From Saccostrea echinata (taxonomy: Eukaryota), in NCBI RefSeq assembly GCF_033153115.1, contig NW_026889774.1:20894001-20958000 (forward strand): 64,000 nucleotides of DNA. The letters run 5' to 3'. A program made the translations under genes and the position numbers. Under the pieces are notes generated by a model that was not told the DNA's origin, made no database searches, and worked only from the letters and a program-made list of their open reading frames with translations. Positions within the stretch are counted from its first letter, which is position 1. The number at the start of each line of letters is the position of its first letter. Positions 12,800-60,235 of this stretch are shown piece after piece.

Positions 12800-15700
12800 C
12801 TATCTATACCAAATGATGTATTCAGGATATGACTGATTCCTGTCATAAACAACAAATTCTCGTTGTGGGAAGTTAGCCACTACACTGTCATATGTTTCTT
12901 GATGAGTTGTGCAAATATTCGAGAGACATATTTTACATGGGGGTCTTCTGAATTGTCCTACTGACCCAGTCATGTACACATCCCCAAGACACATTCTGAT
13001 AAGAAACATGGGGCGTTCTCCCTTCTGGTTTGGTCCTAATATATAAATAGATTATTCTTTACATGGCAGAATTTAATTGAGCACAGCACGTAAACGTCTA
13101 TAACCTTCTAATCATGTATATGCTTATCATGTAGTTTAATACATAAATTTCAATAATTTTCAATATTTTTAAAAACTGAAATGGGAGAGAAATTATCTAT
13201 ACTACCTGAATATGCATGGGACTTTACTGCCACCTCTGCTCCATAAACACCACTACCAAGCAGTCCATTATTTGCCAGTCTACTGTCTAAGCCTTGTGAA
13301 CATATCACATCTACAAGCTGGGCCTTTGTTGCGTGGAAAAAGTAATAATCATTAATTTCTGGGTATGTATGTCGAGTTAAAGAAGGGTCTAAAGTCTTCA
13401 TTACTTTTACAGAGCCTGTCGAGTTCTTCATTTTTTCGAGGGGAACAAAGTTACCTTCAACACTTGCTTTGCGAAATAATCTTTGGCATTCGTCGCCATA
13501 TTTTTGATAGAGACTCACGTTCTCTATTCGCTTTATGCTTACTATTCTTACAGTACCTAGTGTGCTTTTTAGAGTAGCGCCTATTGAATTGAAAGTCAGT
13601 TGGTCTACGGTTTCTAAAGAGTGGACATTTGTTCTAACATCCAAATTCCAGTCTTTCAATTTTTTTGTGTTTGTGTATTTCGTCCAGTATTTTGGTGTCC
13701 TCATGTCTTCCCTGTACTTCCAAGCTAACCAGGCTTTTGTTCCACGCGGTGGCTCATGGTATTGAGAAGACTGTCCGCTCGGTACTGGGTGACCGACAGC
13801 ACTCACTAAAGGGAAATAAAGTTAAGTAAACGTAATACTCCTTTATTTGAAGTATGAACGGAATGCTAACAATTTGAACTATTTTGTCGAAATTCTTTTA
13901 ATCCAGAAAATGATTTTAAGAGAATCATTCTTTTTATTTAAATCTACCTTTTTTCCCAGGACTAGACAATTCATCTTTATATGCCTGCAAAGATGGTTAT
14001 ATTGAGAAGATGTGACCTCACATATAAGCCTAAGAGCTTTTTAACATTCATATACGTAATTCAAATGAGTATATACAGTAACGTATTAGATTAGGAAACT
14101 GTAATCTAACCCACCTTCTCTAATTGTTTCAAGTCTGGACTACCACCGTACAATACGATTCGTACTTCAGAAATGCTATATTTGGCTGAAAACTTTCGAA
14201 TTGCCGCCACAGTGCAAGCAGCTGCTACGTCCAACGGGAACTTCAGCTGTCCTGTACCGAGTGCTGGAAACGCTATGGACTTGTGTCCATGGGAATTGGC
14301 CGTTTTTAGACAATTATAAACAAATTCCTCCAATATCTGAAAGTGTCAAATTTAGTTCAGTTCCATTCAAAACCTTGAATATTCAATTTTCAAAAACGTA
14401 CCATTAGAAATTAACACTTACAATATCTGGTTGGGTTGTATTGCCAGTAGCTTTAGCATACCACGACAACAAGGCGCCATGAAAAACTTCGGAACATTTC
14501 AAATTGTAACCCTTGGTAACAGCAATAAAACCGAAAGCAATGTTATTTTTAGGACATTTTTGATGAAGCTCTTGTACGAGGTTTGGTCCAGCAGCAGAGA
14601 CCAGAGCAGAGGAAGACGCAGAGTTCATGTTGAGATCTTGTCCGATGGCATTGACAACAGCACTAACCTGGTAATGTAAGTCTTGCAGTTAGAACATAGT
14701 ACTTCGTGTATTTAAGCCACATTTTTATTTATTCCACATGAAATGAATTTCTGAGTTCTCTAATATTACTGCAGGGAAACTATCTATGTTCTTCATAGTT
14801 TTACAGTGTATGCTCTTGTATAGAAATGGATAATTTCCTAGATTTTACATTACACAAATTCTGATATATTTAGAAATTACAGTCATACTATATTTATAGC
14901 AACAGATTAAAAAGGCTTACATTTTGATCTGGCAAACTTCCTACTATAACATTCACAGAAATTTTGCCAATATTTTTGCTAAATTTTGTACGCGACATTC
15001 CAGTGGACGAAGCTGCTGATGTTGCTTGGGAAGTCGAACCTGTGGGAATAAAGAAATATACGCTAGTATGTATTAATAAAGCATAAAAGACCAAAAAATG
15101 AATGTTTAGGATTCTAGACGAACATACCTGAAGCACTTTGACCAATTCCAAGTTCATTTAAAAGCTCCTATAAGAAGTCATAAATTAAATAGAAAATTAA
15201 ACCCCCTTTTTTAAATTAAAAAAAAAGTATTAGAATTGCTAGAATACAACAGGGATAACTTCAGCAATTTATTCAAAATTTATTTTAAAAAAAGATAAAA
15301 ATTTCTACATACAGATTGGACTAATGAAGAATCTTGGCTTCCTTTAAAAATCACAATGCTGACGTCTGTAAGACTAGATTGTGGATGATTACGGCTGAAC
15401 TTCTGGATACTCTGTACCATAACTTTAATCGCATTTTTTGTAGGATATCCCAAAGCCCCAATACCAAGCGTTGGAAATGCTATCGATCTTATCGAGTTAA
15501 AGTTCGCCGTTTCCAGACAGCCGGTTACAAACTGTTCCAAACACTAGAAAAGATATCATTGTTGTGTTAGCCAATTATGAAATAAAATTAAAAAAGGCAT
15601 GTTGGCACCACGTGCTCAGCATTCGAATTCTATTTTTCGAGAAACAAATGAACAGAAGAATGTAATATCAGAGTATGAACAAACTCCAGAAGGATCAGGC

Positions 15701-18700
15701 GAGGGTGTTCCCCATTTTGGCAAAGTGCCATGGAAGACATATTTGCATGACAGATTGTATCCATTAGTAATGACTAATCCACCAAAATTTATTCCTTTTG
15801 ACGCTACGTTGTTGAGTTCTGTCTGCAGTCCAGGCCCTGCATCATTCAGTAAAACCCGTGAAAGAGCACCGGTGCTGAGGTTCAAGTCTTTTGGAGCACA
15901 ATGAGCCAAGACATCAGCCTAAAATAATGCACATTTATTTAATTACCTTGGTAAATCTCACTTCTACAACACATAGTAATGAGCTATATAATATGTATAT
16001 GTACATATATTTATCTTTGCTTTTAGGCTCTTAAATCAATGTCGCATCCAAATAATATTTTGGACATGAGTGTACATGTCCTCAAAAAAGTTTGAAGATG
16101 CCATTTAATTTTTAATTTTTAATTAGGCTCCTTAACTACTAGTAATGTCGCATCCAAATAATTTTCTGGCCATGAGTGCACATGTTCTCAAAACAGTTTG
16201 AAGATGACATTTGATTTTCTTAAATCTGTGCTAAAATTTACGCTGTTCAGCTCATACATGTTTATAAAAGCAAGCAAGTTCAATGTGAAATTCAACGTCA
16301 TTAAAATACTCACGCTTTCCTTGTTTAGAGCACCGAGAACTACTTTAATATTTACAGACCCGAGTCTGACACTATTTCCAGAATGTCTGGAAACCTTGGA
16401 AGCACTGCCTTGTTTATGATCTGAAAATAAAAGATAAACATAATTTTCTGAGAAATAAAATATACTATATTAGGAAAAATAAAATGGAGACAGATTTTCA
16501 ACTTACTCTGGTTTGATGTAGATGACGAATACTTTCCTGCTGCGTTTAGGAAGTCCTTGACAATAAAATGTATATAAAATATAACAGTGAAAATGAAAGG
16601 CAAAGTTTATAACATTCAATTTTTATTTTTTCTTATTACAGCCTTTGGATCTTAAAACATGCCTTAGTTTCTGAGCCCTGGTCAAGTTGGGGACAGAAAT
16701 AAAACGTAAACATCCATATGAAATACATGTATACAAACTTTAAGAGTATCCGTCAAACAAATAAATTTCCTTCTTACGAAAATAAAACAATACACTATAA
16801 AGTTATTTGCAAACATATTGACAGGTGCATTTCTATAAACTGTTTTTTTTTTTTCAAAATTAGATCCTGGATCTCACACTGTAGTGATGATCTGATTATA
16901 AAAATGGTGATAATTTTAGATCTTTTTAATCTTTCACATTTCCTTGTTTGGTATTAGGAGAAAGACAATGGATTGTTTCCTAAATGTTTTGACATCCATG
17001 TTATGTCTAAATTTGGATTTCTTCTGATCATCGTATGTGAATTAGTAAAATAAGACTTCAAATGAGTCACAATTTTTATGTATTATTCATAAATCCAAGC
17101 ATATTACAGATTTGTTTTGTAATCGAGAAAATTTAACATCTTACAATAAGAACAAGGCAATAATCTATACCTGGAAAGTGCTGCTTTCTTGTGAGTATAT
17201 TACAATGGACACAGATGTTATTGTTCGTGATGTGCACTCTTTGATGCATTCCAACATTATTTCAGCAACTCTTGGAGAGGGATAGGACAGGTACCCGGTC
17301 CCTATCGGTGGGAAGGCGATGGACCTGTAACCGTCAGCATCAGCCTGATCTAGACATTCTGTCACTAAGTCTGCTAAGATCTGTGAACATGAGCAAATCT
17401 TAGTTGAATCGGACATAAGGTAACAGGCTTCATTGATAGAGGGAAGGACACTCTAACTCTTTAAATGTGCTCAATGGAACTTAAACTCGTATAGAAAGCA
17501 CCAACAAATGAAATGCTTTTTGCTGAATTATTCACTACTCGACCCAGAATCCTGAAATTGGAAGACTCCTTATAAATTAATGAATTTGTAATGTTAATTA
17601 ATACCTGTTCGTCTTTTTTAGATGAATATTTTGCCAGAACTCCATGATATATTGCCTTACAGGCGAGATTTCCTCCTGTTGTGACAGCTATTTCCCCTGT
17701 TGATAACGTGCCAGGATAGTTCTGACGACACTCTCTCTGAATGCCCCTCCCTGCTGCAGATAGGAGGGAACTGGACGCTCTCCCTTGACTCAGATCAAGA
17801 CTAGGATTTGCACTGTGAACTATTACGTCAACCTAAATTAAAAAAGAAACCATCAAAATAAAATATGGAGATAACGAACAGTATTCAAGCTCAAAGTCCA
17901 TTTAAACAATACAAATCGGGAACAGAGCAAAAAAAAAATAAAATAAAATAAATTCAAAGGTGGGATCGGGTGCCATTGAGGAGTGAGCATCCTCTACAGA
18001 CCGGTCACACCCGCCGTGAGCTCCTTGTCATGATCGGGAAATAACGAAAAAAATCCGTCGACAATTCAGTAAAATCCGTCGACAATTCAGTGTGTAAATA
18101 ATGGCCTAACAATTAGTATGAAAAACGTCAGTCAGCATTTGTTAATGAAAGGTTGTAATTGCTGACAAGGTCATTGTATCGACCATAAAACTTGCGAAAT
18201 GATGACTTCAAACGAGACTGTTGATATCCTGTTTGTTAGTCAATAGTTTGCCCCGTTTCAGAAATTCTTCATACGTAGAGCATGCTCTTGCGTATCGAAT
18301 CAACTGGGAGATAAAACCCCCATAAGCGGGTGATAAGGGTATATTGCATAGGTGCTACATAGGTAAGGGAAGTTGACGATTGAAAAATTAAAGTTATCAC
18401 GTTTATCATAAAGCTTGGTTGTAGGTTACCATTAAAGTCTTTTTATAGTAAAATATCCAAATATGAAACAGATGTGTCAGACTTTGTGATATTTTTTTAT
18501 TTCAAGCTCCGTGGGATATATTGAGTCGACATATGAATGAAAGTAACTATTGTTAATTGATAATATGTCGTCGATATATCTAAATGTCGCGTTGAAGGCC
18601 ACAGCAAGTGTTTTATTCTCCTCATGTAGAATTTTTTGAATCAATTCTGTTTCATCTGAACACAAAATGGTTTGCTAATAGGGGGGCGCAATTGGTACCC

Positions 18701-21304
18701 TTGGGTATTCCAACAGATTGTTGGAAGACCTGATTTTCATATATATTTATATACATATATTTCTGATATTGTCAATCAGAAACTCAAACTTCTTTTTAAT
18801 ATCAACTTTAGAGTAATTCTGTGTACAATCAGAATGTTTTTTAGCAAAATAATTTTGCAGATGACCAATGACAAGGTACATGTGAGTATATTTACGAGTT
18901 CTATTTTTATTGAAAACGCAGCTGTTAATGATGTCAAAAAGCCTAGACTTTAATTTATCGTGGGGAATGGTTGTATAAAGTGTTGAAAAGTCGTATGTTT
19001 TGATGTTATTGATTTTGTTAAAATTTTACTAAAAGTTCCTTGAAGTTTTTAAGTATCCACATCTGATTTACACCACTTCTCGAATATACTGTTGTACAGT
19101 ACTCCTAAAGTTTCTCCTTCACTGCTAGAAATATTTTAGTGACGAGTAAAGAAAGAGGCTTGTTAGAACATTTACTTGAACCCGTTATGTATCTTTGTTT
19201 GTAAGGATATTTATGAAGTTTTGGAATCCAGTATAGGTATGGGTATGTTAATTCAAATTCATTTTGATTGTTTGGAATATTAAAAATATTTAAAACTGAC
19301 GTATGGTTTTGAAGAATTTCCTCCTTAGAAAGGGAGCTATGGGTATAAATTGGATTACCACTTGCAGAATTTAATCCTAGTTCCTCTAAAATTCAATTCT
19401 AATAATGAGCCTTACAAACAAAGACAATGCTATTACTGCTTTGTCAGCGGGGACCGGTACATACTGATCGTGTAATCTATCTACATGTAATTCTAGTTTC
19501 ACTTCTGCATTGTCGAAGACATAAGTATAGATGTTTTCATGTAAAGCTTATACGGTACCAATTTTGATGCACCAGATGCGCATTTCGACAAATTATGTCT
19601 ATTCAGCGATGCTCATAACGAAACATTTGAAATCCGAAATATTTATACTGCGCGATTTCAACACCCATCTGATACATTTAATTCATTCTGACAAAGTGTC
19701 AAGTCTTCTTATTCATATTTGGCCCATCGTCTGGCGTAATCTTCTATAGAATTCATAATATTTATGAAATTATGACGCCAGGTGGAAGATCGGGGTTCCC
19801 TAAACTTTGGCCCTCTTATAATAAGTGATTTAAGGTCCTCATTATTAACTATATTTACGTCACCAGTAATGACGTGTCCAGCAGGACTATAGTTGCAGGG
19901 TGAAGAAGAACATGAGCACGATGGAGGTTTATGTTTCAGATGCTCGATATCTAGGCACTGTAGAGTTTTTTTATCATCAAAAAGTTTGGGAGCAATTGTC
20001 GATGTATATTTGTAAGAAATACATAGTGTGGACTTCAAATTGAAATATGGTGGAATACAAGACTGGACCTTTGTGTGATTAAGAATATTACTCATATTAA
20101 CTGCGTCAATTCCTTTGTTGGCATCTTGAAGTTTAAAGAACAAACGGGTTTTTTGAGCAGTATTTTCGGTAGCAGTAGTGAATCAAAAGAGACATCGTGT
20201 TTAATAGGTCAGACCGATGTCCATGACTACGCTTATGTCTCTGTGTACTGTTAAAATGTCCCATCATATTCATATTGCTACACTATGGGCTTGAAAGATT
20301 CCCATCACTATCGACAATGTCATTGCTACCATATGGAGAGGCCGTGCCTAGTTTTCTAATACAGTATTCTTCTCGGTGTCTACGGAAAGGTGTACTCAGT
20401 GGTGGGCTAGTATGATGGTAAATCTTTTCTAGAATTCTAGCTTTCATTAGCAAAATAGAATTATCAGGTAAATTAAAATGCTTGTATAGAAAAGTTAAAA
20501 TAATCTTTCATGCTATTTCTTCGAATTTTGAAGAATCCAATCATTCCTTTCCTTACCTGTTGTCTGGTAATATCTCCTCCAACAATATCGACTGTAATAT
20601 TACCAATCTGGAAACCCGACTTGACTTGAAAACTTGATCCTCGGGAACTGTGTTTGGGTAAATAAGTGGCCCCTACCAACTCGTCGGAATCGTCAGTAGA
20701 TTCTACGGAGAGAATACACTTATTGCACATAGAAGAAGAATAAAGCAGCACAATGTCATATTGCTCTAGATCAAAACAGGTCTCTTCATTAGTAAGGAGA
20801 ACGTTTACTTTTAGCTTTCATCTTAAATTTTTTAAATAGAATTATCCCAAAAGTTTCATTTAAGGATACATAACGCAAACAAAAAAAATGACGCATGGGT
20901 TGATATATACATATATTTTCTGACTGGTTTTGAATAGAAATGACATAAGTAATAAATCCCTAAAATATAAAGAAACCGTACGTTTTCTTTGCTGATTAAA
21001 TATGCGAGTCTGTTTTGCTTTCTATGTAATTCTATATAAAATTCTGGGCACATTTTTAACATTGTCTTAACAAAATCTTACAAAATCCTCCCACTTTACC
21101 TGGCAAACATTAATCAAATCACCTATTTGAATATAAATCTATGAGGAAAATCGCTGATTTTTGATAAAAGTTTACTTGTGTTATTTATCCTTAAAGCAAC
21201 GAAACTATTTTCTTACCTTCTTCATCAGATTCTGAGGATTCTGAGGATTCCGACAACGAAGAATCAGAATCGTCCAGTAACCTGCGATTTCTGTAACCAG
21301 CCAT
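12800..21304 (-). CDS. Macro-PARP paralog A: acidic N-terminus, 3 macrodomains and ART/PARP catalytic domain, ~930 aa
   Basis: 15 GT-AG exons in frame: 21217-21304, 20557-20702, 17605-17832, 17171-17380, 16507-16555, 16314-16420, 15685-15918, 15313-15543, 15128-15167, 14921-15039, 14422-14667, 14115-14336, 13948-13984, 13206-13805, 12800-13035 (2793 nt). Macro motifs VDVIV..., SIAFPxxGTG; catalytic motifs YFFHAT, GVYGAE..KSHAY, EFVVYD...YPEY. Confidence 0.9.
16038..16220. repeat. Direct duplication with ~106-bp spacing in an intron of paralog A
   Basis: AATGTCGCATCCAAATAAT...CATGAGTG...AGTTTGAAGATG at 16038 and 16144. Confidence 0.75.
17860..20150 (-). mobile_element. Degenerate Penelope-like retroelement (Naiad-type RT) in intron 2 of paralog A
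   Basis: Frameshifted RT fragments: CSC...GHVITGD (CxC linker), YLYWIPKLHKYPYKQRY, TFRYIDD, GVLSPS/LIRYARACS-like C-terminus. The ORF ends after the RT with no C-terminal GIY-YIG. Confidence 0.85.
19569..19612 (-). ncRNA. Type I hammerhead ribozyme motif with a core mutation
   Basis: Minus strand reads GCAUCG-CUGAAUA-GACA UAAUU UGUC-GAAA-UGCGCA-UC-UGGUGC: stem I, stem II, palindromic stem III. The core is CUGAAUA rather than CUGANGA. Confidence 0.65.
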
Positions 21305-22454: not shown

Positions 22455-25400
22455 TCAGATATACCAAATAAGAAATTCGGGATAAGACTGATTTCTGTCA
22501 TAAACCACGAACTCGCGATCGGAAAATGCTCCACCATTGGCCACTACACTGTCATACATCTCTTGATGACTTGTACACTGAGCATTACTGCATTTTTTGC
22601 ACGGGGCCCTCCTAAAGTTAGTGTCTACATTTGTCAAAAAGACATCTCCGAGGCACATCCTGACCAAGAACATGGGTCTTTCACCTTTGCTATTCGTTCC
22701 TATGAACAAAACAAAATATTTCTGTGTAAAACATACCGATATACTCATTGTATAACTCTACAAGTCATCATGTCTCCCATAGCAATTAATTCGTTGTTTG
22801 TCTTTCTTGTCATAAACGAAAGTTAACTTCTAGAATGCTGTTTTATTATTCTGAATCACCAATAGTAGTATATTTACTATAATTTTGTTCGCCTGTCGAA
22901 CCAGGCATCAAAGATTAAGATGTGCATAGTTTTAATAAAATCACAATTTAAAAAATAAAATAAGATATTTTGTATGTTCAATTAAATTTTCATACCTTAA
23001 GAATATTTTAGGAATGACTCTCATTCTTGCCAAGTTACTCGAGTATTACCTGGTTTGGGCCAGTTTACATGTCTGTAGCAACGATTTCAAAAGTGGGAGG
23101 GGGGCAACTTCCCCCTCCCCCCAAAAATGAAAAAAAAAACTAAACTGACCAAAAGGGGGGGGGGCAACTTCCCTAAATTATCTGCAAAGAAAAAACGAAA
23201 AAAAAAAAAACAAGCATTCTGAGAGTATTGCATTAGCAATACTAGTCCTCTACCGGCAAGTGCAATCTGGTTCCCGTTAAAAATTGAAAATGCCATATTT
23301 CGGTCAAAAATCAATAAAGTGGAATGAAATGCAAACTTGATCTATAACTCATCAAGGTAAAGTCACATACCAAAAATCAGCTCAATATTTGCAAGCGTTT
23401 AGAAAAAAAGTGCGGAAAAGCAAGTGGGACACACTGACAGACAGACAGAGGGTCAGACAGACAGACAGACAGACGGACGGACAGACTAAGAGGAAACGTA
23501 TAGTCCCCTTCGGTTTCACCGGTAGGGGACTAAAAAGCAAATTTACTGTTCAAATCCTGAAATTTGCCTGTGCTTGACCTATCAACATCAAAAAGTTGGG
23601 GGGGGGGGGGACTAGCATCTAAAATACTACCATAGCAAAATCTATACTCAGAAAAAAGTGGGGGGAGCCCACTGGCCCCCCACCCCGCGTTCTACGGGCC
23701 TGGTTTACGTTTTACGCGAAGCATGGGGGATGGAAACATGCAGATTTTAACCTCTACACAAAAGCTAGGCTGTTATATAAAGACAACATGTAGTAGAGGT
23801 ACTTTTATTAAGAATTATAAAAGTTGAAATGATTTTAAATGAAATAAAATAAATATTAAATATAAATTAAATAAACTAAATAAACTATTAAATATGTTAT
23901 AAATGCATAAATGATAAGTTTTCTATTAAAGTTTCATTCTGTTCATTCTTTACTAACATGGGTATTTAGTGACATAGATATACACCCCTTTGGATCCACA
24001 CCTGTACATATACTTTTACATGACCACACATATCTATTGGTCAGATTTTGAAACGGATAGATTTCATTGGTTGAAAGTTTAGTCTTTGTGGGGTACTGAG
24101 TTTTATTCAGAATTAGCTCAAGGTTTAGAATGGAGAAGACATAGTTATATAGCTGCTGACTTTATTTATTCAAAGACCTAAGACAGTTCCTGAAAATGTA
24201 AGTTTTACCCTTTTTTATGCCTTAAGATATGTTTTCCATAATTTATGTGAAATAGGTGGAAAACATAATATTTCACTTTTAAATGTTAACATATTGAATT
24301 ATCTGTCTGTATAATCAGATGTAGATAAATCTGATGGAGTTTTCTTATTAATTAATTTGTATATATACCTAGAAATATTTTTATGTGAATATTTTGATAA
24401 TCAAACTAATTTGAATATCTATTTATTATGAGAAAGGTATTTGTAAAGAACAAATCCTGATTATTTTATTTATTGTACATAGGTAACACCATAAGTAAAG
24501 AATTAAATTATTGCTTTGGAGAAAGTTCAATTCCATAAATTGGTATGTCTATCTGTATATATATTTTTTATGATTTGTACAGAAACATAAAAGAAAGATA
24601 ACTCTTCACAAGACTGTTAAGAGTAATTATGTTGTAAGAGTTAACTCCCTTATATAGAATTTCTCTATTTTATCATATCGAGTGAAATTTATAAATATGA
24701 TAAATAATTGTTAAAGGGAAGACAGATAATTTGTTATATTTTTATGATCAGAATATTAGATAATTGATATATTGTTTGTACATATTTTTATGACGCAATT
24801 TGTATATTGCAGGACATATCCATTTTCCATTATTCCATATATTCCATTAGTTCCATTTTCCATTATCCATTTATCATCAACTAGACATGTCACCATAATA
24901 AAATGTAAAATTTAAAAAAGCTACAAGTGTGTTTTCCATCATTGCCGGGAATACCCGCTACAAACATACAATGTACCTGTGTAACCGTGAGACTTTGATG
25001 CCATTTCTGCTCCATAGACTCCGACACCAAGCCGTCCGCCCCCTAGCCTACTATCTAGCCCCTGTTCACAGATCAAATTCACAGCATTTGGTTTCGTACC
25101 GTGGAAAAAGAAATACTCGTTTATTTCTGGATAAGTGTGCTTCGTTAAGGATTGGTCAAGATACTTCATTACCCTCACCGGGCCCAGCGAGTTCTGTACT
25201 TTATCCAAAGGAGTAAAATTCCCTGCCATACTAGCTTTGCGAAATAATCTCTGGCATTCATCGCCGTACTTTTGGAACAAACCAACATTTTCAAGCCGTT
25301 GTATACTGACAATCGTTTTGACTTGTACAGATTTTTTAAGGGCATTGCTTATGGAACTTTTGGTAACTTGATCCACCTTTTCAAAAGAGCTACCCCCCAA

Positions 25401-28400
25401 ATTCCAATGTTTTAGTTTTTTGGTGTCGGTGTATTTTGTCCAATATTTCGGCGTCCTGAGATCTTCCCTGTACTTCCATGCCAACCAGGCTTCTGTGCCT
25501 CGCTTTGGTTCGCTGTATTGAGAAAAGTGTTCGACAGAAGCTGATTTTCCTGCTTTGCTCACTAAAAAACACAATATATGAAAATCCAAGTAAATGTAAT
25601 TTATTGTAAGTTTTATTCACAATTTAACCTAAACACAATTCTTTGCATGAATATGGTAACTCTAAATGCACTTATTTTCATGGGACCCAACTTTTCACGA
25701 GGTTTGAAAAACAAATATTGATTTCATTTCGTGGTAAGTTGGTAGACATGACACTGTAGATTAAAATTTTAACCTTTCATGGAAGACATGTATTCGTGAT
25801 TTTCTTTATACCATGAAAACAACGAGAATTAATGCTCATGAAAATAAATGCTTTCACAGTTTATTCTTTCATTACAAAGCTTCGATGGTGAAAGAGACAT
25901 TGAAAAAAAAATCCTCTACCTCTGTGTCCAGGAGTGGTCATTTCATCCTTAAAGGCCTGCGAAGAGATAATGTCATAAAGCTATATATTTTTTCAAGATA
26001 ACATTTCCATCTTTATATTTGAGAGAGTTAAAATGTGTTTGTTGTTTTTGTATGAAAAAGGAAGTCATGATAGTATAAAACCTTCTTAAGCTGATTCAAG
26101 TCTGGACTCCCACTATACAGTAAAATTCGTATTTCGGAAATGCTATATTTGGCTGAAAACTTTTTAATTCCTGCGACAGTACAAGCAGCAGCCACATCTG
26201 GTGGGAACTTTAACTGTCCTGTTCCTAATGCTGGAAACGCAATGGACTTGTGTCCACGTGAATTGGCCGTTTTCAGACATTTATAGACGAACTCTTCTAG
26301 GACCTATAATATGTTTAAGGAGAAGTTAATCTTTGAAAATCCTGAACCCTTAAAGACATATTTTAAGAAGAACTTACAATATCTGGTTGGTGTTTACTGC
26401 CTGTTGTTTTTGAGCTCCATGAAGATAAGGCACCATGAAATACTTCTTTACAATTTAAGTTGTAACCCTTAGTAACAGCAACAAATCCAAAAGGAATTTT
26501 ACCAAGACATGTCTGATGAAGCTCTTGCATGAGATTTGGTCCAGCAGCAGACACTAGGGCGGAGGACAAGGCGGAATCCATGCTGAGGTCCTGCCCAATG
26601 CTATTGACGACAACATCTACCTGGTATTTATATATCGGTCATTAAATACAAAAATTAACCAATATATTTTTGCTTATGATTCCTGTACAGTTCTCCGAAT
26701 AGGAAAATGATCAACATCGTGTAAAATTCTTTTGTTTCATAAGTGCTCTTGACTATCGCAAAAACTTGTCTTAAGTATTGTAGCATTGCCACATTGAGAA
26801 GTCTTACATTTTGATCTTGAAGACTACCAACTGAGACATTCACATTGATTCCGCCAATATTATTACTAAAGTTTGAGATCGAAATTCCAGGCGAAGCTTT
26901 AGATCCTCGCTTTTTATTGGAACTCAAGCCTGAAAAAATTTGAAAACGTGTTTTGGAATGTTGAAAAGAGTTATATTAATTTTTTTTTGTTTGAAAGAAA
27001 GTTTTGACAACATGAAAAAAGAATCTTTACCTAAATGTTTCATATAAAGAGTTCAGAACTCGTATTATTCTGAAAAGAAATGAACCCTAAAACTGTGACC
27101 ATTTCCGAGCTTATTTTACAATTATTATTTTTAAAAAACTTACTCAGTTTTGAGGTTGATGACGAATATCTCATAGCTGCGTTTAAAAAGTCCTTTAAAA
27201 GAAATATACGGGAAATGATTCAATCCAGACAAAGTATTGATAGCAATTTTTATTTTAAATAATATATAATTTCTTAACTTTTATAAGGATGTAAATACGG
27301 ATGATCACGTGATCATATTATATAAAGCCCAAAGGATTTTATGGTAGATTTGATCACTTGCCAGTCCGTATTCACATCACGATAAATGTTTAAAAGTTAT
27401 TCCTTACATTACTTATTTACTTATTCTGCAAGAAAGACAGTAACAGAAATATGGCTGAAACGAAGCAAAGTAAAAAATATCCAAAATCCATTATTTTCTT
27501 ATGGATCGAACGAACAATTTCATTTTTATATAAAAAGTGTCTTATGAAAAACAACTGCGCTACAAGCCATAAATTGAATTCCGTAACTGTTAAATACAAA
27601 TACACTGTCAAAATTTCCATTCGACATATCTATAATACCGAAATTGTCAAACTTTAACCATTCTATATAACCATATGGACAGTTTTTTGTGTCTCTTAGA
27701 CCATCCTGGAAGCTTTAAATAATGGAAATTTATATATATATATATATATAAAAGGTATTTTTTTTTTACTTTTCATTTTCTCAAAAAAAATTGATGTATG
27801 AATGCATAATTTGATTTTGATTCAAAATAGATCAAGAAGGGAAAAAGATAAAAAAGATCATGAGGGGAAAATAAGGTAAAAAATGTTAAGACAAAATTTA
27901 GAGAAAAAAATAACTAACTGATAATAAGTCTTTCATAATGTAACATTAACCAGTATTGTTGAAACATTCGTTAGCGATTACCTGAAAACAACTACTTTCT
28001 TGTGAGTATATAACAATGGACACAGATGTTACTGTTCGTGAAGTGCAGTCTTCAATACATTCCAACATTATTTCAGCAACTCTTGCTGGATTGTATGACA
28101 GGTTCCCAGTCCCAATCGGTGGGAAGGCAATAGACCTGTAACCGTCAGCATCAGCCTGATCCAGACATTCTGTCACCAAGTCTGCTAAAATCTGAAAAAA
28201 AATTCCAATCAAAAGTCTCATTTTTATATCAACAAAACCTTTTCTTTGAGTCCAAAATTGAGCTTCTTCAACTGTTTAATATATTTGCATGGAAATTTTA
28301 TCTGTTTTCCTTACAACCCTTATTTTTATTGTTGACAAATATCTCATTTGTACCCTTATTTCCTCTGTATTTCTTGGAAGAAAAATGTTTTGAAAAAATA

Positions 28401-30709
28401 GCCCAAGGCAAATGTTTAAATAGCCCCAGGGATCTTGAAAACAATTCGACTTGCAGGAAATTCTAAGCAAGATTCGTTGTTCAGATAACTCAGTTATATA
28501 TTTATTAACCCCAAGAGGTAAATACATTTGAAGAATATTTCATAATTTTAATATTGGGGAATTGTCATGCTTTTTTTTTTTGGGGGGGGGGGGACAAATA
28601 TAGTAATTTTGAAAAATAGTAGCGATATATATTTATTACTTGGACATGACACAGAAGTGACAAATATCTCATTTGTACACTCAGTTTTTCTGTATTTCTT
28701 GCAGGAAAAAAGTTTTGAAAAAATAGCCCAAGACAAAGGAACAGAGATCTTGAAAACGGTTTGACTTGCAGGAAATTCTTAGCCCAATTCGTTGTACACA
28801 TAAATCAATTATACATTTAATAACACCAAAAGATTATTACATATTCCAATTTGATAAACATTTCATAATTTTAATATTTGGGAATATTGTCTTCTTTTTT
28901 TTTTAATTATGGACAAATATAGTCATTTTGAAAAATAGTAGCGATATATTTGTTGCTGGGACATGACATAGAAGTGATAAATATCGTATTTGAAACCTTG
29001 GTTCCTCCGTATTTCTTGCAAGAAAATGTTTTGAAAAACAATGTTCAACATATGCTATTACTAAGAAAAAATTACTTTAATGAGTGGTGGTAATTTAAAA
29101 GTTTTAATTCGTAAAATTGTTCATCTTATTCTGGCAAGCACTGCATTCAAATTTTCAAAAAACAATGCACATTGATTATAATTTGATGCCGCTTCAAAAA
29201 GTATTTAAAAATGCTATTGAGAGAAATGAAGACAAAAACCAATATACGGATTTTATCATACAATTTCATAACATTTAAAAAAAAAAATAAATGTTGGGAT
29301 TTTTTTTGGGATAAACTAGGATGTCTTGTGTTATGAATATTCATTTTTTTTACTCACATAAAGAGTAAGAAACACCACAAAAGGCAATCATGTAATTTTG
29401 CTCATTAATTCACCTAATACCCACAGAAATCATGGGTCCAACTTTTAAATAAAAAAAAAGAACCATAATGATACCCGTTCGTCTTTCTTAGATGAATATT
29501 TGGTCAGAACTCCATGATATATAGCCTTACAGGCGAGGTTTCCCCCTGTTGTGACAGCTATTTCTCCTGGATCTAACCTTTCAGGATAGTTCTGACGACA
29601 CTCTCTCTGAATGCCCCTCCCTGCCGCGGCTAGGAGGGAACTCGAAGCTCTCCCTTGGCTCAGATCGAGACGAGGATTTGTACCGTTGACTATTACGTCA
29701 ACCTTAATCGAATGATTATAAGCAATCAAGACAAACATTTCAGTCTTTTGTAATGTTATATAATTATATGTTATATAATTATATAATGCATATGATTCTA
29801 CTCCAGTTATAATTAGAAAAAAAAGATATTCCGTCTAATTTTTTTCTCAGATTTTCTGAACACTTGCTGACATGTTTTTATGTAAATGAAGGAATCATCC
29901 ATATTCCATGACGTAAGAAGCAGAACTTATATTTCATCAACATTTCTTCACATGCTACTTTATTAACTTTATTAATGAAATGTGAAGATCAAATAAACAC
30001 AAACATTCAGTTTCTTAAAGATCGATTAATTTTGGACATAAATCCATATGACAAGGTTACTGAAACCTTTATTTATTAATTTATCTGTTAGATTATTTCT
30101 TACTTTTTGTCTGGTAATTTCCCCTCCAACAACAGTAACCGTTGCATTACCAATCTGATAACCTGACTTGGCCTTAAAACCTGAACCCCGAGGCCTGTGT
30201 TTGGGTAAATACGTGGCCCCTCTTAGATCCTCCTCTGAATCCTCAGATGATTCTGAAAGAAAGTGAAATAAAGTTTTTAAAAACAATTTTATTTTGAAAT
30301 AAAAATCTTAACTTTTGTATGATTTAAAAAGATCCGTATAAAAAATTTTCACAGTATAAATTTGAAACGGATGCCTTGAAGCCACAATTGATAATATTTA
30401 TCTGAGTCGGCTCACTTTTACCAAATTTGAAACCCTGCCGCATAATGTCAGTCATAAAATTTGACAAAATTAAGCACTGTAAAGAATTTTTTTTTCTTGT
30501 ACACGGAATCTCCAAGATTTTACTAAGCTTGTATGTCACTTAAAAACACTAAACATATACTTTTTCACGTCCAAGTGCACGTTACTATAATCATTGCTTG
30601 CTAACCTACCTTCGTCGTCGACACTCTCGGAATCAGAGGTTTCAGACGACGAGGAATCCGAATCATCAAACAATCTACGAGATCTGTATCTGTATCTGTA
30701 GCTAGCCAT
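22455..30709 (-). CDS. Macro-PARP paralog B: acidic N-terminus, 2 macrodomains (M1, M3) and catalytic domain, ~729 aa
   Basis: 11 exons in frame: 30610-30709, 30104-30252, 29475-29702, 27982-28191, 27144-27192, 26808-26929, 26378-26620, 26082-26303, 25920-25956, 24977-25561, 22455-22699 (2190 nt). FFHGT / GVYGAEMASKSHGY / DREFVVYD. Confidence 0.92.
23209..23533 (+). mobile_element. Short HINE/Helentron-like element; related copy at ~45748-46020
   Basis: AACAAGCATTCTGAGAGTAT..AGCAATACTAGTCC start, (GACA)n tract, 3' hairpin TAGTCCCCTTCGGTTTCACCGGTAGGGGACTA. Confidence 0.7.
28300..29040. repeat. Imperfect ~320-bp tandem repeat (2-3 units) in an intron of paralog B
   Basis: GACAAATATCTCATTTGTAC at ~28333 and ~28659, with a variant at ~28976; TTTTGAAAAATAGTAGCGATATAT at ~28607 and ~28926. 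Confidence 0.7.
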
Positions 30710-53797: not shown

Positions 53798-53809
53798 TAT
53801 TATACATTT

Positions 53810-55563: not shown

Positions 55564-58500
55564 TTAACAACTGTACCAAATTAGATATTCAGGATAAGAC
55601 TGATTCCTATCATAAACAACAAACTCTCGATCCGAAAAGGCTCCACCATTGGCCACTACACTGTCATGAATTTCCTTGTGAATTAAACATACAGGGTTCG
55701 TACATATTTTGCATGGTGGCCTCTTATAATTTCTTTCTGCCTTGGTCAGATAAATATCACCAAGACTCATTCGCACCAAAAACATAGGATAACGATTTTG
55801 ATTATCACATCCTAAATGAAAGAAAAATAGTTCATAACAGATATCAATAAATGATAATAAAGCTTCTTTATACCCTTAGTGTCATTTTTTTTACTGACTA
55901 CAGTATTACACTAAATATGTATTAAATATTATTTCAAATACAAAAGGTAAATTTAACGTTTTTCTTGCAATGCTTACATAAAATAAAAGACCAAAAGACC
56001 AGTAAAGTGATCATTACCTGCATATTTATGTGATTTAGAGGCTACCTCAGCACCGTACACTCCTGCCCCAAGTCTTCCACTCGCTGCAAGCCTACTGTCC
56101 AATCCTTGACTGCATATGATGTCTACGTTTTCAGGCCTTGTACCATGGAAAAAATAGTACTCGTTAATTTCGGAGTGAGTATGTTTTGTCATGGATGAAT
56201 CCAATGAACCCATTACTTGCACAGGCCCAAGTGACTGTGGAATTTTATCTAATGTCGTGAAATTTCCTTCCACGCTTGCTTTTCGAAATAGCCTTTGACA
56301 TTCTTCACCATACTTAAGAAGCAATTCGACATTTTCTAGTCTCTGAATACTGATAATATGTGCATTTCCTAATGTTTTACTTAAAGCACTTGCAATGGAT
56401 CTGCGCGTTATCTGGTCAATAGTTTCTAAATGGAACGTTCCCGATTTTTGCAGCAGATTCCAAGACTTAAGGTTTAAATCGGCCGTAAATTTGGTCCAGT
56501 ATGGTGGTGTTCTGAGTGCTTCTCGATATTTGTAATCAAGGTAAGCTCTTGTTCCTCGTTGTGGAACAGAATGTAAGTCCCAAAGTCTAATTGGAGCTGA
56601 TCGGAAAACAGTTTGTTTACCTTTAATAGTATATAAATAAATGATAATAATGAAGTAAAAATGATTGCTAATTCCTTGCTATATTTGTCCTATATGTTTA
56701 ATATAACAAGTAGATTAAAATATTTTCATTAATACTTACTTGAGGAATTGACCTGGTTTATTGCGTCCTTAAATGCCTATCAATAATAAATAAAAGTAAC
56801 TATTAAATTAATCAAATGATGAATATCAGTATGGTGTTGATTAAATAAATGTAACACAAATGATCCTTTATACAATGTAGAAAATACAGCTAACTATTAA
56901 CCTCTTTCCATACAGGATTGAAAACTTACCATTTCTAGTTTAGGTAAATCACAACTCCCCCTATACAGTACAACTCGTACATCTGAGATACTCTGTTTCT
57001 GTCGTTGCTTAGAAAACTTTTCTATAGACGATACTATGGTAGAAGCTGCCATATCTGCAGGAATCTTATGAAATCCAGTCCCAAGGGCAGGAAAGGCTAT
57101 GGACGTGTAGCCACTTTTATTTGCTTTTTCCAGACAAAGCAAGACAAAGTCCTCTAAAAACTATAATACATATTGACTATCCCAGAGAACATAATTAAGC
57201 CCTTAATGCCGAATTTATTGGGAATATAAATGAATTTAGTAATGATATTGTTTTTGTTTGTTGATTGGATTTTGAGTTTAGATTTACTTGGAAATCAGCA
57301 TTCAACCTCCAAGTAGCTTTACTTACCTCATGAGGAAGTTTGTAACATGCAGTAGGTATTGAGTATCCTGGTATTAAAACACCGTGATACAATTTGTGGC
57401 ACTTAAGATTGTGACCATTTGATACAGCAATGTCTTTATAATTAATTCCGTTGGGGTAATTTTGAGTAAGTTCAATTTTTAGTCGATGCCCAGCAGCCGC
57501 CATTATGGCAGCAGATGCCCCTTGTGTCATCTCGAGATCGTGAGCAACGCTATTGACAATGACATCAACCTGTTAAAGGAATCACAGTACATGTTTATCA
57601 AATCTTACGAAATAATTCAGCAGTTTCTCCGGAGGGAATGTTTCCGTTTCGGATCGATACTGTTGCAAACAATATGGTAATTAATGTACGTTTTATTTAC
57701 AGTATCATTGAATTGTCACCTTTTCTTCAGCTATACTCCCAACCAGTACTCTGAAACTGATGTCTCCAACTTGACCAGAACATAAAAGTCGGGAAACAGA
57801 GTTCGGAGCTAAAATATAACAAAACATGCAAAGTTTACAACAAACATGTATTTATCGTAATTGATGTCGGAAGACCAAATACAGTTTTAGTACTCTAAAG
57901 TCATATACAAATAAAATTAAATAAATTTATATCATGTGTTAATAAATGGAACTTTGCATAATCCAACAAAAAAATTGCGTCGGAAAAAATAAGTGGAAGA
58001 AAATTACTAAAATAATATCGATCAATCACATAGGTATTTGAATTTTTCTACAATGAATTTTCAAACCTATGGCGATTTCGGCCCCAAGATATCCTCGTCC
58101 TTCGCCTAATTCGGTCTTAAATACCTGAAATATAAAACATGTTCTATTTGTTTTGAAACATTTGTTATTTGTATGTCATTATTTATCTTTAAGGTACCAG
58201 AGAGGTGAGAAAAATAGAATGCATTAAATTATTTGAGAGATTTAGAGATATTATCGATATTTTTTTTAAAATCAGAAATATTTTTCTATTGTTACATGAA
58301 TGTAGGATTAAACGAAATTCATACGAATGCTACTTCGTAAAATTCAAACATTTTTGATTTTTGGGTAAATGCATTTTGTTTTTTATTCGAGGAAATTATA
58401 TGTAAATACTCAGCATACCGAAAGAAGTTACATAATTTTATGGAGACTCAAAGTATGCAAACATCCTTTAGTATGTATGTTATTTTCTAAGCACGTATGC

Positions 58501-60235
58501 GCAGATTCGACGCCATGGCATTCACAGGTACTGGAAGTTGCAACCACGTATTCAAATCGCAAATTTTATAATTTTCACTTAGCTTTTCAGTGGTTTTAAA
58601 ATTTGTTTATATAGTTTTTTGCCGGCATAGTAGAAATCATTGCACAGACCTTGCTTGACTATGATACAGTGCTGGAATTAATTAGGAGGACTTCTAAACT
58701 AAAAAGCAATTCTATGATTATGTAAGCTTGTGAAACTTCAGTTAAATGTTAAGAAGTAAAGGTACATTTACTTTGCCTATTCCATATACTGATACTTTTC
58801 AATTGAAAAATAACAGAAATAGATGTTAGAACACTTACATTTTGAACATACGGCCAGTCACTGCTTCCTTCATACACCACAATGACAATTCGCCAGATAT
58901 TCGTACGAGAATTTTTGGTGCTAAAGTCTCGTATTGTTTTAACCATCAATTTTGCTGATTGATCAACAGGATAATGTAAAGAACCAATTCCGAGTGTTGG
59001 AAAAGCAATGGAGAGTACAAAATGACTGTTTGCTGTTTCGAGGCACTTTATCATAAATTTCTCTAATATCTACAAATACCACATTATCATCAAGATCAAT
59101 TAAATCAAAGCAACTAACTGTAAAAAGGGTCCATAAAGAAATAAATTTCACTGTATAAATCTAAAATTTAAATGTATTTATTGCTATTTTTATTATTCTA
59201 ATAGTGGAATACTGTAATTTATCCCTTGAGCAAAAGTGATATTTTTGCAAGTGATATTTTAACTATTTTCACTATGGCAAAATATAAAAATCGCGGCAAA
59301 ACTCGAGATGTTATAAAGAAAATACTCCTGTAGAAAGCAAGCTGAGAAAATAAATCATCCTGGTCGAAGATCCTAAAATTAAGAACTTTCTCCAAATGGT
59401 TGCTAAATTCCATGTTAACAATTTTTAATCTTTCAATCGCTTAGCTATGATGTCTCACAACCGCTCAGCTATGACAGCACTGCATACGACACTGCATTAT
59501 GAAAAGTCAGTGACAAAAGGAAATAAAGAATTAATAATAAACATAAAATCTAATAAATTGTAATTATATATGGAATTTATTTCATTCGTGAGACAGGATT
59601 TTTTAAATATTTTCATTCGTATTTCGCACTCAAGAAAATATTTTAAAAAATCCTGTCCAACTCTTAACATAGATATATTCAAGATAGAGAGAAACAATTA
59701 TGATTTTAAAGTTACTGAAGATGGATCGGGTTGACTGGTTCCCCAGTGGGGCAGGGCCCCGTGGTACACAAATTCGCAATGAAGTTGATGACCCTTACTG
59801 ACTGCAATGTCTCCGTATTCAATGCCATTAGAATATTTCTGGTTTAATTCATCTTGCATTTCTCTTCCTGCAACTCTCAACAGTGCTTCAGACATTCTTC
59901 CATTGCTGAGTTGCAAGTTTTTTGGTCCACTACACACTAACACATCTGCCTGCATCACAAATCAAATTATTTTCATGTCTTGTCATTTCTTTCATATCTG
60001 ATTGATGTTCTTACAATAAACATTGAAAGCTTTGAAATTGTTTTAATTTAAGATAATGGTTTATTTATTTCAGGTTTCTTTGATCCACTAAGATTAAGAT
60101 TTTTATGTATCCTTAAGTGAACTTATACAGAACGCCCACAATACGACTTTCCCAATTTTAGCACTATTTTGTGTCACTTTTTTTCTTCGGCACAGTTGAT
60201 TGAACATGGTGCTCTCATGATGCTTTAAATATACT
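55564..60235 (-). CDS. Macro-PARP paralog D: 2 macrodomains (M2, M3) and catalytic domain; 5' end unresolved or degenerate
   Basis: Exons 55564-55810, ~56018-56596, ~56740-56776, ~56930-57160, ~57327-57569, ~57719-57808, ~58067-58124, ~58840-59069, ~59715-59948; linker exon at ~60110-60235 has no clear in-frame donor. FFHGT / GVYGAEVASKSHKY / DREFVVYD. Confidence 0.8.

What the first reader, a model, noticed from the sequence alone, without database searches (positions are those of the whole stretch)
12800..60235. Tandem family of macrodomain-PARPs with a tankyrase-like H-Y-E catalytic domain: a candidate reader-plus-polymerase ADP-ribose system
Seen: all four genes join PARP14/15-like macrodomains to a catalytic domain reading H(G/A)T...GLDSRL...G(V/I)YGAExAxKSHxY...EFVVYDRxQSYPE. 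Established: vertebrate macro-PARPs lack the third triad glutamate (PARP14/15 H-Y-L, mono-ART; PARP9 degenerate), while H-Y-E plus 'YFAENSSKSNQY' and '[15 protein letters not shown]' is the tankyrase pattern. Inference: this is not a simple PARP14 ortholog but a chimera of ADP-ribose-binding modules and a possibly poly(ADP-ribose)-competent domain. It has expanded in tandem as immune or stress genes often do, and could feed forward by binding its own product.
Basis: partly seen in the sequence, partly recalled or inferred. Interest (0 to 1): 0.85.

Follow-up and report, generated by a model that had tools for sequence, protein, structure and literature searches.

The report
Glutamate-retaining macro-PARP gene array in oyster
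An oyster chromosome carries a tandem row of expressed genes that join ADP-ribose-binding macrodomains to a PARP enzyme domain that still has the catalytic glutamate lost by all vertebrate relatives; they belong to a large, apparently undescribed mollusc/brachiopod/annelid lineage that is separate from the oyster's true PARP14 genes.

Summary
Four intact minus-strand genes (A-D; at least six in the full array, plus one decayed relic) each encode 2-3 macrodomains and a PARP catalytic domain with H-Y-E. The window is Saccostrea echinata; gene C is NCBI's 'PARP15-like' XP_061184932.1, and RNA-derived contigs from two studies show it spliced as modelled.

The Glu aligns with the TNKS2 catalytic Glu and with the PARP15 Leu. 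It is a family trait: 162 of 168 relatives are H-Y-E, and all named ones are molluscs, a brachiopod or an annelid.

The genes are not PARP14 orthologs. The same genome has true PARP14-type genes (RRM-macro-WWE-ART, H-Y-I/M) on other contigs, and an exclusive H-Y-E + PARP14-type clade is rejected (AU p 0.019).

The 'tankyrase chimera' reading is not favoured. The ML tree joins the family to classical clade 3 (93/98), and long members carry PARP14-specific RRM/KH domains. It is not excluded either: AU p 0.25, the family profile scores best on TNKS2, and the structural fit to tankyrase and PARP15 is close to a tie.

The best reading is a stem-like clade 3 macro-PARP lineage that kept the ancestral active site and gained a Cys3-His knuckle. 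Poly- versus mono-ADP-ribosylation cannot be decided in silico.

The parts
12800..20730 (-). Gene A: three macrodomains + H-Y-E PARP domain (H-A-T variant). Exon-like frames: 20476-20817 (5'), 17464-17832/17168-17452, 15619-15918/15283-15543, 14407-14688/14109-14345 (macro half a / half b pairs), 13204-13755 (catalytic N half), 12803-13036 (catalytic C half).
   Evidence: Paralog blastp map; Pfam; collinear tblastn against P0155/P0175; residues H 13333-13335, Y 13243-13245, E 12857-12859. The start codon is inferred (ATG at 20730).
22455..30307 (-). Gene B: two macrodomains + H-Y-E PARP domain. It is the ortholog of S. cucullata 'PARP15-like' P0155 (93% identity in the catalytic core).
   Evidence: H 25101-25103, Y 25014-25016, E 22512-22514, Cys knuckle 22566-22601. 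The 5' end is inferred.
33813..36309 (-). Decayed macrodomain relic of a further array member: an in-frame stop at 36169-36171 inside the conserved macro motif, and a frameshifted second half at 35177-35427.
37542..45056 (-). Gene C = XP_061184932.1 'PARP15-like' (P0001, 676 aa): two macrodomains + H-Y-E PARP domain. Exons: 44967-45056, 42681-42920, 42255-42488, 42003-42057, 40954-41389, 40608-40837, 39033-39068 (micro-exon), 38187-38762, 37542-37789.
   Evidence: tblastn of P0001 at 93-100% identity; spliced contigs in 4 runs from 2 studies, with every joint GT..AG on the minus strand; AF2 model pLDDT 89.9; H 38314-38316, Y 38224-38226, E 37602-37604.
55564..60207 (-). Gene D: two macrodomains + H-Y-E PARP domain. 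Exon-like frames: 59701-59961/58752-59069, 57198-57572/56900-57160, 56016-56567, 55567-55812.
   Evidence: H 56145-56147, Y 56055-56057, E 55624-55626. The start codon is inferred (ATG at 60207).
37656..37691 (-). C-x2-C-x4-C-x2-H knuckle in the loop about 20 residues before the catalytic Glu, shown here for gene C. The equivalents are 12902-12937 (A), 22566-22601 (B) and 55678-55713 (D).
   Evidence: Invariant in the four paralogs. The three Cys are kept in 152-165 of 172 family members and the fourth ligand is His in 71 of 167. It is an insertion relative to TNKS2 and PARP15. Model confidence there is 89-92. Zinc binding is inferred.
38659..38673 (-). Conserved 'PxYWT' element at the N-terminal edge of the catalytic domain (gene C). 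Equivalents: 13681-13695, 25437-25451, 56493-56507.
   Evidence: P and W are nearly invariant in the family. The structural alignment to PARP15 covers this element, whereas most tankyrase alignments start after it.

Best explanation
The window holds four members of a tandem array of at least six expressed macro-PARP genes in Saccostrea echinata. They belong to a large lineage found in Mollusca, Brachiopoda and Annelida. The lineage is distinct from the true PARP14 orthologs of the same genome, although it shares a PARP14-like ancestry.

Its catalytic domain kept the ancestral PARP active site: His-Tyr-Glu plus the 'SKS' lysine. The classical clade 3 PARPs (PARP7, 9-15) replaced the Glu on their stem branch. 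The lineage lost or never had the WWE domain, and it gained a Cys3-His/x knuckle in the loop before the Glu.

Inferred mechanism: the enzyme binds NAD+ through H, Y and the Ser/Tyr of the nicotinamide pocket, and the Glu polarises the ribose, so catalysis would not depend on an acidic acceptor as it does in PARP10/14. The PARP14-macro2/3-like macrodomains dock the enzyme on ADP-ribosylated targets. The knuckle shapes acceptor choice.

The likely biological setting is innate immunity or stress, given the repeated tandem duplication and long-term retention of copies. Whether the product is mono- or poly-ADP-ribose is open.
For: Shown:
- Domains and triad.
- Expression and splicing of gene C.
- Family-wide conservation: 162 of 168 H-Y-E, Lys 250 of 258.
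- All named members are lophotrochozoan.
- True PARP14-type loci with RRM, macro, WWE and a non-Glu ART lie on C47, C16 and C6. No WWE or RRM exon lies in the C25 or C56 H-Y-E arrays.
- ML tree: H-Y-E family + classical clade 3 at 93/98, excluding the oyster tankyrase; classical clade 3 is monophyletic (100/99) on a long stem.
- AU test rejects H-Y-E + PARP14-type (p 0.019).
- Long members carry RRM_PARP14_3, KH_PARP14_2 or KH_PARP14_8.
- Macrodomains score best on PARP14 macro2, PARP9 macro2 and PARP14 macro3.
- Catalytic fold: PARP15 Z 22.5 and PARP12 Foldseek E 4e-14.
- Paralogs are 60-77% identical and have closer orthologs in S. cucullata, so the copies are old and retained.
- 'PARP14'-annotated oyster genes respond to OsHV-1 and to Vibrio (PMC12803857, PMC9162580; lineage not specified).
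Against: - The position relative to tankyrase is not settled: H-Y-E + TNKS is only 7 lnL units worse (AU p 0.25).
- The family profile scores highest on TNKS2, and a catalytic-only member fits tankyrase slightly better than PARP15 (Z 22.6 vs 21.4).
- In the careful tree the classical clade 3 nests inside the family instead of beside it, which may be a long-branch effect.
- The tree has 211 columns, one tankyrase, and no vertebrate sequences, which I could not obtain.
- No activity, zinc-binding or induction data exist for these genes. RNA evidence covers gene C only.
- Gene A has H-A-T.
Confidence: 0.68

Rival explanations
1. Domain chimera: a tankyrase-derived (clade 4) catalytic domain was joined to PARP14-like macrodomains in a lophotrochozoan ancestor, giving a reader-plus-polymerase enzyme.
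For: The family profile scores best on TNKS2 (97.5 bits vs 77 for PARP15 and 66 for PARP14). It shares the H-Y-E and 'AExSxKSxQY' pattern. The catalytic-only model fits TNKS1/2 at Z 22.6, rmsd 1.6-1.8 A. The AU test does not reject TNKS + family (p 0.25). NCBI names P0112 'tankyrase-like'.
Against: The ML tree prefers clade 3 (93/98). Foldseek on the gene C model ranks PARP12 and PARP15 first, with no tankyrase in the top 50. The tankyrase zinc segment is missing and the family's knuckle sits elsewhere. The N-terminal PxYW element aligns with PARP15 but not with most tankyrase chains. The shared features are ancestral states also present in PARP1/2, so they do not show kinship. Protist kinase-PARPs share the family signature, which points to an old domain type.
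Confidence: 0.15
2. Ordinary PARP14/15 orthologs, as the database names say, in which Leu/Ile reverted to Glu.
For: NCBI names them 'PARP15-like' or 'PARP14-like'. The macrodomains are PARP14-like. The catalytic fold matches PARP15 at Z 22.5 and 30% identity.
Against: True PARP14-type genes with WWE and RRM exist elsewhere in the genome and are far closer to human PARP14/15 (102 vs about 25 bits for the last exon). An exclusive clade with them is rejected (AU p 0.019). The family has no WWE domain. Glu, the SKS lysine and the knuckle are conserved across three phyla, so this is not a recent reversion.
Confidence: 0.07
3. The triad is intact but the enzymes are strict mono-ADP-ribosyltransferases like PARP3 and PARP4, or they modify nucleic acids. 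On this view the Glu has no bearing on polymer formation, and the 'polymerase' idea fails while the rest stands.
For: From established knowledge, H-Y-E is necessary but not sufficient for polymer formation (PARP3, PARP4). The acceptor loop is remodelled by the Cys knuckle. The closest structural relatives include the mono-ARTs PARP12 and PARP15.
Against: Nothing in the sequence excludes chain elongation. The SKS lysine and the Glu are both kept, as in PARP1 and tankyrase.
Confidence: 0.55

Closest known systems
PARP14 / PARP15 / PARP9 (vertebrate macro-PARPs, clade 3)
   Same: Tandem macrodomains of the PARP14 macro2/3 type come before a C-terminal ART domain of the same fold (Z 22.5 to PARP15). 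Long family members have PARP14-type RRM and KH domains. Tandem duplication is typical of the group, and so is a probable immune role.
   Different: The triad is H-Y-E, not H-Y-L (PARP14/15) or Q-Y-T (PARP9). The SKS lysine is kept. There is no WWE domain. A Cys3-His knuckle sits in the acceptor loop. The catalytic domain is split by a phase-1 intron. The lineage is separate from the oyster's own PARP14-type genes.
Tankyrase 1/2 (clade 4)
   Same: H-Y-E triad and the 'GxGxYxAExSxKSxQY' and 'E(Y/F)V(I/V)Y..Q.YPEY(L/V)I.Y' motifs. No helical regulatory domain. Highest profile score (97.5 bits) and a structural fit of Z 22.6.
   Different: No ankyrin repeats or SAM domain. The tankyrase zinc site (C-x2-H-x4-C-x2-C after SKSNQY) is absent. 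The zinc-like knuckle is at another position. The tree favours clade 3.
PARP12 (clade 3, H-Y-I)
   Same: Second-best profile score (87.5 bits) and the best Foldseek match to the catalytic domain (E 4e-14, TM 0.81).
   Different: PARP12 has CCCH fingers and WWE domains, no macrodomains and no Glu. The oyster's PARP12-like genes form a separate single-exon array on contig C30.
Tetrahymena clade 3-like PARP Q22F17 and protist kinase-PARP fusions
   Same: Clade 3-like catalytic domains that keep the Glu (Citarelli 2010). The kinase-PARPs found here share the 'FREFVVYD..CYPEYLIEY' signature.
   Different: They have other N-terminal domains (kinase, ankyrin) and no macrodomains, and their relationship to the family is unresolved (basal polytomy).

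Membership tests
PARP superfamily (diphtheria-toxin-like ART, H-Y-E class) | PARP catalytic fold with His, Tyr and Glu at the NAD+ site | tested here: met
   Pfam PF00644. H/Y/E align with TNKS2. AF2 models have pLDDT 90-93 and reach Z 22 to PARP15 and tankyrase.
Macro-PARP (PARP9/14/15 architecture) | One or more macrodomains N-terminal to the ART domain in a single polypeptide | tested here: met
   P0001 (gene C) has two Macro domains plus PARP. Spliced contigs join the macro exons to the catalytic exons. The best macro matches are PARP14 macro2 and PARP9 macro2.
PARP14 orthologs | WWE domain immediately before the ART domain | tested here: not met
   No WWE hit in the exons or in P0001. Genome-wide WWE exons lie at the PARP14-type loci on C47, C16 and C6, and none lies in the C25 array.
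PARP14 orthologs | Catalytic domain groups with PARP14/15-type domains | tested here: not met
   AU test rejects an exclusive clade with the oyster PARP14-type (p 0.019). The last exon scores 25 bits to PARP15, against 102 bits for the oyster PARP14-type exon.
PARP14 orthologs | Triad H-Y-(L/I/M), the mono-ART signature | tested here: not met
   All four genes, and 162 of 168 relatives, have Glu.
Clade 3 PARPs in the broad sense | Catalytic domain is monophyletic with PARP7/9-15-type domains, excluding clades 1 and 4 | tested here: inconclusive
   The ML tree supports it at 93/98, but the alternative with tankyrase is not rejected (p 0.25). No vertebrate sequences were in the tree.
Tankyrases (clade 4) | Ankyrin repeat clusters + SAM + ART with the tankyrase zinc motif | tested here: not met
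   No Ank or SAM in Pfam scans of P0001 and relatives. The zinc segment is an insertion in TNKS2 that the family lacks. The oyster's real tankyrase is on C47:9.03 Mb.
Poly(ADP-ribose)-forming PARPs | Chain elongation activity | not testable with these tools
   Only the necessary residues (Glu, SKS Lys) can be read from sequence. PARP3 and PARP4 show that these are not sufficient (established knowledge).

The most novel reading that the evidence does not exclude
Lophotrochozoans possess a third kind of PAR-forming enzyme besides PARP1/2 and tankyrase: macrodomain-guided polymerases that read ADP-ribose marks and extend or amplify them. These would have expanded in tandem as antiviral effectors, with a zinc knuckle that sets acceptor specificity. 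[quoted passage not shown]
Probability: 0.2. Interest if true: 0.85.

Novelty: new variant of a known kind. Interest (0 to 1): 0.66.

Why it matters
The textbook picture says that every animal clade 3 PARP, including all macro-PARPs, lost the catalytic Glu and is a mono-ART or inactive. Citarelli 2010 lists a single Tetrahymena exception, and a 2026 PARP14 review repeats the point.

Here a family of hundreds of genes across three animal phyla keeps the full H-Y-E site next to macrodomains, and it coexists with classical PARP14 orthologs in one genome. That has three consequences:
- It gives a natural experiment on what the Glu does in a macro-PARP context: mono vs poly, acceptor chemistry, and independence from substrate-assisted catalysis.
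- It bears on how and when mono-ART activity arose in clade 3.
- It flags that the 'PARP14/15-like' labels used in oyster immune transcriptomics lump together two or three different enzyme lineages.

Tried and rejected
1. Three word-indexed homology searches did not return any vertebrate PARP or tankyrase: P0001 catalytic region, P0115 catalytic region at E<=10, and the Lingula P0228 macro/KH region. The last returned only itself. The tree therefore uses the oyster's own tankyrase, PARP14-type, PARP12-type, PARP1 and PARP2-like genes as anchors. Their identity was checked against PDB sequences.

2. The protein atlas returned only generic PARP clusters.

3. The VIA second look on the 676-residue model was swamped by macrodomain hits, so I folded a catalytic-only family member instead.

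4. I considered and rejected 'invertebrate PARP14 simply retains Glu', because non-Glu PARP14-type genes with the full architecture exist in the same genome.

5. I considered and rejected pseudogenes for A-D. All conserved exons are open and collinear, and gene C is spliced in RNA-derived contigs. Only the 33.8-36.3 kb relic is decayed.

6. Joined (spliced) models of genes A, B and D were not sent to any search or folding tool. They were searched exon by exon by reference, and joined only inside local scripts, with X at each junction, for the alignment and tree. The full-length database protein P0001 stood in for gene C.

Full report
**What is there.** The window is AT-rich eukaryotic DNA (GC about 0.32). 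It lies at C25:20,894,001-20,958,000 of a 923-Mb assembly. All-against-all comparison of open frames shows four paralogous exon series. Each has pairs of 'macro half a / half b' exons, then a roughly 185-residue exon carrying the N-terminal half of the PARP domain, then a roughly 80-residue last exon carrying the C-terminal half. Pfam confirms Macro (PF01661) and PARP (PF00644). Gene A has three macrodomains; B, C and D have two. Stop codons are at 12800, 22455, 37542 and 55564.

**Identity of the genes.** A profile of the four catalytic exons, searched against 1.84 billion representative proteins, gave 978 hits. The best, P0001, is XP_061184932.1, 'protein mono-ADP-ribosyltransferase PARP15-like [Saccostrea echinata]'. 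Its exons map to gene C at 93-100% identity between 45056 and 37545. NCBI's 1675-residue model LOC133192948 (P0175) maps downstream of the window. It fuses two further array members, genes E and F. With extra PARP and Macro exon hits at C25:20.979-21.000 Mb, the array has at least six genes. A decayed relic lies between B and C, with an in-frame stop at 36169-36171 and a frameshift. S. cucullata has three 'PARP15-like' paralogs on one 145-kb contig. Array paralogs are 60-77% identical in the catalytic core, while the cross-species pairs are 82-93% identical. The duplications are therefore old and the copies have been retained.

**Expression.** Contigs from four public runs in two studies were laid on 37500-43400. 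They skip exactly the predicted introns. All joints are CT..AC on the + strand, which is GT..AG on the minus strand. They include the 397-nt intron that splits the catalytic domain (37789|38187) and a 36-nt micro-exon at 39033-39068. The runs are only guessed to be RNA, but spliced contigs can only come from transcripts. Gene C is therefore transcribed and spliced as modelled. Genes A, B and D were not tested.

**The triad.** Phmmer aligns the last exon to PARP15 with the window's Glu opposite the PARP15 triad Leu. The family profile aligns 'lfHGT', 'GkGiYaAEkstKsdqY' and 'fREFvvYdknQvYPEYvItY' to TNKS2 'LFHGS', 'GAGIYFAENSSKSNQY' and '[20 protein letters not shown]'. By established numbering these positions correspond to PARP1 H862, Y896 and E988. 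Exact codons are given. Gene A reads H-A-T instead of H-G-T.

Across 168 family members that cover all three positions, 162 are H-Y-E, 4 are Y-Y-E, one is Y-Y-Q, and one outlier is H-Y-V. The 'SKS' lysine is kept in 250 of 258. All four paralogs also have C-x2-C-x4-C-x2-H about 20 residues before the Glu. The three Cys are kept in 152-165 of 172 relatives, and the fourth ligand is His in 71 of 167. This segment is an insertion relative to TNKS2 and PARP15. Conversely, the tankyrase zinc segment is an insertion that the family lacks.

**What the family is related to: similarity.** The macrodomain part of a 20-sequence family profile scores best on PARP14 macro1-2 (227 bits), then PARP14 macro2 (146), PARP9 macro2 (126), PARP14 macro3 (115) and PARP15 macro2 (107), with PARP14 macro1 at 85 (domain labels). 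A catalytic-only profile scores:
- TNKS2 97.5 bits
- PARP12 87.5
- TNKS1 86
- PARP15 77
- PARP14 66
- PARP13 52.5
- PARP10 51
- PARP1 43

**What the family is related to: structure.** The AF2 model of P0001 (pLDDT 89.9) gives PARP12 (E 4e-14, TM 0.81) and PARP15 (E 2.5e-13, TM 0.81) as the best catalytic matches by Foldseek, with no tankyrase in the top 50. By VIA-align, PARP15 scores Z 22.5, rmsd 2.3 A, 189 residues, 30% identity over model residues 431-676. A model of the natural catalytic-only member P0112 (pLDDT 92.6) fits TNKS1/2 at Z 22.6, rmsd 1.6-1.8 A, about 190 residues. It fits PARP15 at Z 21.4, rmsd 2.7 A, 195 residues. The PARP15 alignment reaches further N-terminal, over the conserved PxxW element. 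Structurally the domain sits between the two clades.

**The oyster's own PARP repertoire.** Searching the genome with PF00644, PF01661, PF02825 and PF23085 and reading the exons shows these groups:
- **(i) H-Y-E two-exon domains next to macro exons.** They lie on C25 (this array, plus 7.95 and 12.88 Mb) and on C56 (8.20-8.53 and 11.77 Mb).
- **(ii) A macro-less array of single-exon H-Y-I domains on C30.** These are PARP12-like (123 bits to PARP12, 87 to PARP14, no tankyrase hit).
- **(iii) PARP14-type loci on C47, C16 and C6.** They have the order RRM_PARP14_3, macro, WWE, ART and read 'GVYFAVNASYSA...NP(G/S/V)(I/M)F(V/I)IF(N/H)D(T/S)QAYP'. One last exon scores 102 bits to PARP15 and 101 to PARP14.
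- **(iv) A canonical tankyrase on C47:9.03 Mb,** with its own zinc motif.
- **(v) PARP1, PARP2-like and PARP3-like genes.**

No WWE or PARP14-RRM exon lies in the H-Y-E arrays. The oyster therefore has true PARP14 orthologs without Glu, and the window's genes are a different lineage.

**Phylogeny.** I assembled catalytic cores locally, with X at each exon junction, for the window genes and the oyster comparators. I added database family members, including Lingula, and protist kinase-PARP fusions that share the family signature. The careful ML tree has 57 rows and 211 columns, uses LG+C20+F+G4 by PMSF, and is rooted on PARP1 and PARP2-like. It unites the H-Y-E family with classical clade 3 at 93/98, apart from tankyrase and the protist group. 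Classical clade 3 is monophyletic (100/99) on a long stem of 1.36. It falls beside the family in the quick tree and inside it in the careful tree.

AU tests:
- Family + tankyrase: delta lnL 7.0, p 0.246.
- Family monophyly: delta lnL 6.3, p 0.247.
- Family + PARP14-type exclusive clade: delta lnL 38.6, p 0.019.

Affinity to clade 3 is favoured but not proven.

**Whole-protein ancestry.** Long family members carry PARP14-specific domains. Argopecten P0125 and Mya P0083 have RRM_PARP14_3, and P0125 also has a weak KH_PARP14_2 match. Lingula P0228 has RRM_PARP14_3 twice, Macro, KH_PARP14_8 and an H-Y-E PARP domain. Many others list PF23085. This favours an old duplication of a PARP14-like gene over a fusion of macrodomains with a tankyrase domain. 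All named members are molluscs, a brachiopod (Lingula) or an annelid (Dimorphilus).

**Literature.**
- Perina 2014 (PMC4245714) already describes frequent tandem duplication of PARP14-like genes in invertebrates.
- Citarelli 2010 (PMC2964712) states that in clade 3 only Tetrahymena Q22F17 keeps the Glu.
- Delgado-Rodriguez 2023 (PMC10221186) treats oyster macro-PARPs as PARP14-like and does not discuss the ART triad.
- A 2026 PARP14 review (PMC13224862) does not mention Glu-bearing macro-PARPs.

I found no description of this lineage in the searchable library. This is absence of evidence, not proof. 'PARP14'-annotated oyster genes appear among the antiviral effector genes differentially expressed during OsHV-1 infection and among genes induced by Vibrio plus low salinity (PMC12803857, PMC9162580), but the lineage is not specified.

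**Mechanism: inferred, not shown.** With Glu present, catalysis should not need substrate-assisted activation by an acidic acceptor, as has been proposed for PARP10/14. Other acceptors, or chain elongation, therefore become possible. PARP3 and PARP4 show that H-Y-E alone does not make a polymerase. The macro2/3-like macrodomains probably bind ADP-ribosylated targets. The Cys knuckle in the acceptor loop probably binds zinc and shapes acceptor choice; model confidence there is 89-92.

**Verdict.** 'Not a simple PARP14 ortholog' is supported. 'Tankyrase chimera' is disfavoured but not excluded. Polymerase activity and feed-forward binding remain open. This is a new variant of a known kind, of real interest to ADP-ribosylation and invertebrate-immunity specialists.

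Noticed in passing
window 33813-36309 (-): Decayed macrodomain exons lie between genes B and C. There is an in-frame stop at 36169-36171 inside the conserved macro motif, and the second half (35177-35427) is frameshifted. This is a pseudogene relic of another array member.
   Followed up: partly
C25:20,978,500-21,000,000 (window-relative 84.5-106 kb; loci L038, L042, L039): Two more array genes (E and F) lie downstream of the window. NCBI's 1675-aa model LOC133192948 (P0175) joins them into one read-through protein with two catalytic domains.
   Followed up: partly
window 8190-9200: A tandem satellite of about 165-bp units, with copies 80-98% identical when translated.
   Followed up: no
window 19108-19392 (-) and 32855-33388 (+): Two copies of an ORF fragment, 81% identical at the protein level and in opposite orientation. 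It is probably a transposable-element remnant, one copy in a gene A intron and one beyond gene B.
   Followed up: no
window 17905-18442 and 54467-55233: A repeated segment (52-83% identity at the protein level in several frames) lies upstream of gene A's first macro exon and just downstream of gene D's stop codon. Its nature is unknown.
   Followed up: no
window 41440-42030: RNA-contig depth rises to 300 here, with many loose ends, inside a gene C intron. A repeated, transcribed element sits there.
   Followed up: no
window 13333-13335 and 12857-12880 (gene A): Gene A reads H-A-T instead of H-G-T, and it lacks three residues (NGG) just before the catalytic Glu. Its activity may differ from that of B, C and D.
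   Followed up: no
G000 C56:8.20-8.53 Mb and C56:11.77 Mb: A second tandem array of H-Y-E macro-PARPs with a variant signature ('GMYLAE ... EFVTYHHYQNYPEYLI').
   Followed up: partly
G000 C30:21.19-21.36 Mb: A tandem array of five single-exon PARP12-like H-Y-I catalytic domains with no macrodomain exons nearby.
   Followed up: partly
G000 C54:61.09-61.60, C47:13.14-13.40, C6:14.49-14.74, C76:1.33-1.57 Mb: Large clusters of macrodomain genes with long single exons and no PARP domain nearby. These are macro-only expansions.
   Followed up: no
G000 C2:16.87-18.84 Mb: About 25 WWE-domain exon hits lie in a 2-Mb stretch, so a large WWE-containing gene expansion sits there.
   Followed up: no
proteins P0244-P0251 (metagenome/Logan): Protein-kinase + PARP fusions (one also with ankyrin repeats), apparently from microbial eukaryotes. 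They share the family's 'FREFVVYD..CYPEYLIEY' signature and H-Y-E.
   Followed up: partly
protein P0082 (1154 aa): A protein with up to seven PARP-like stretches and an H-Y-V triad ('QVFMTYDNDKAYPAYLITY' occurs twice). It is an unusual multi-ART architecture.
   Followed up: no
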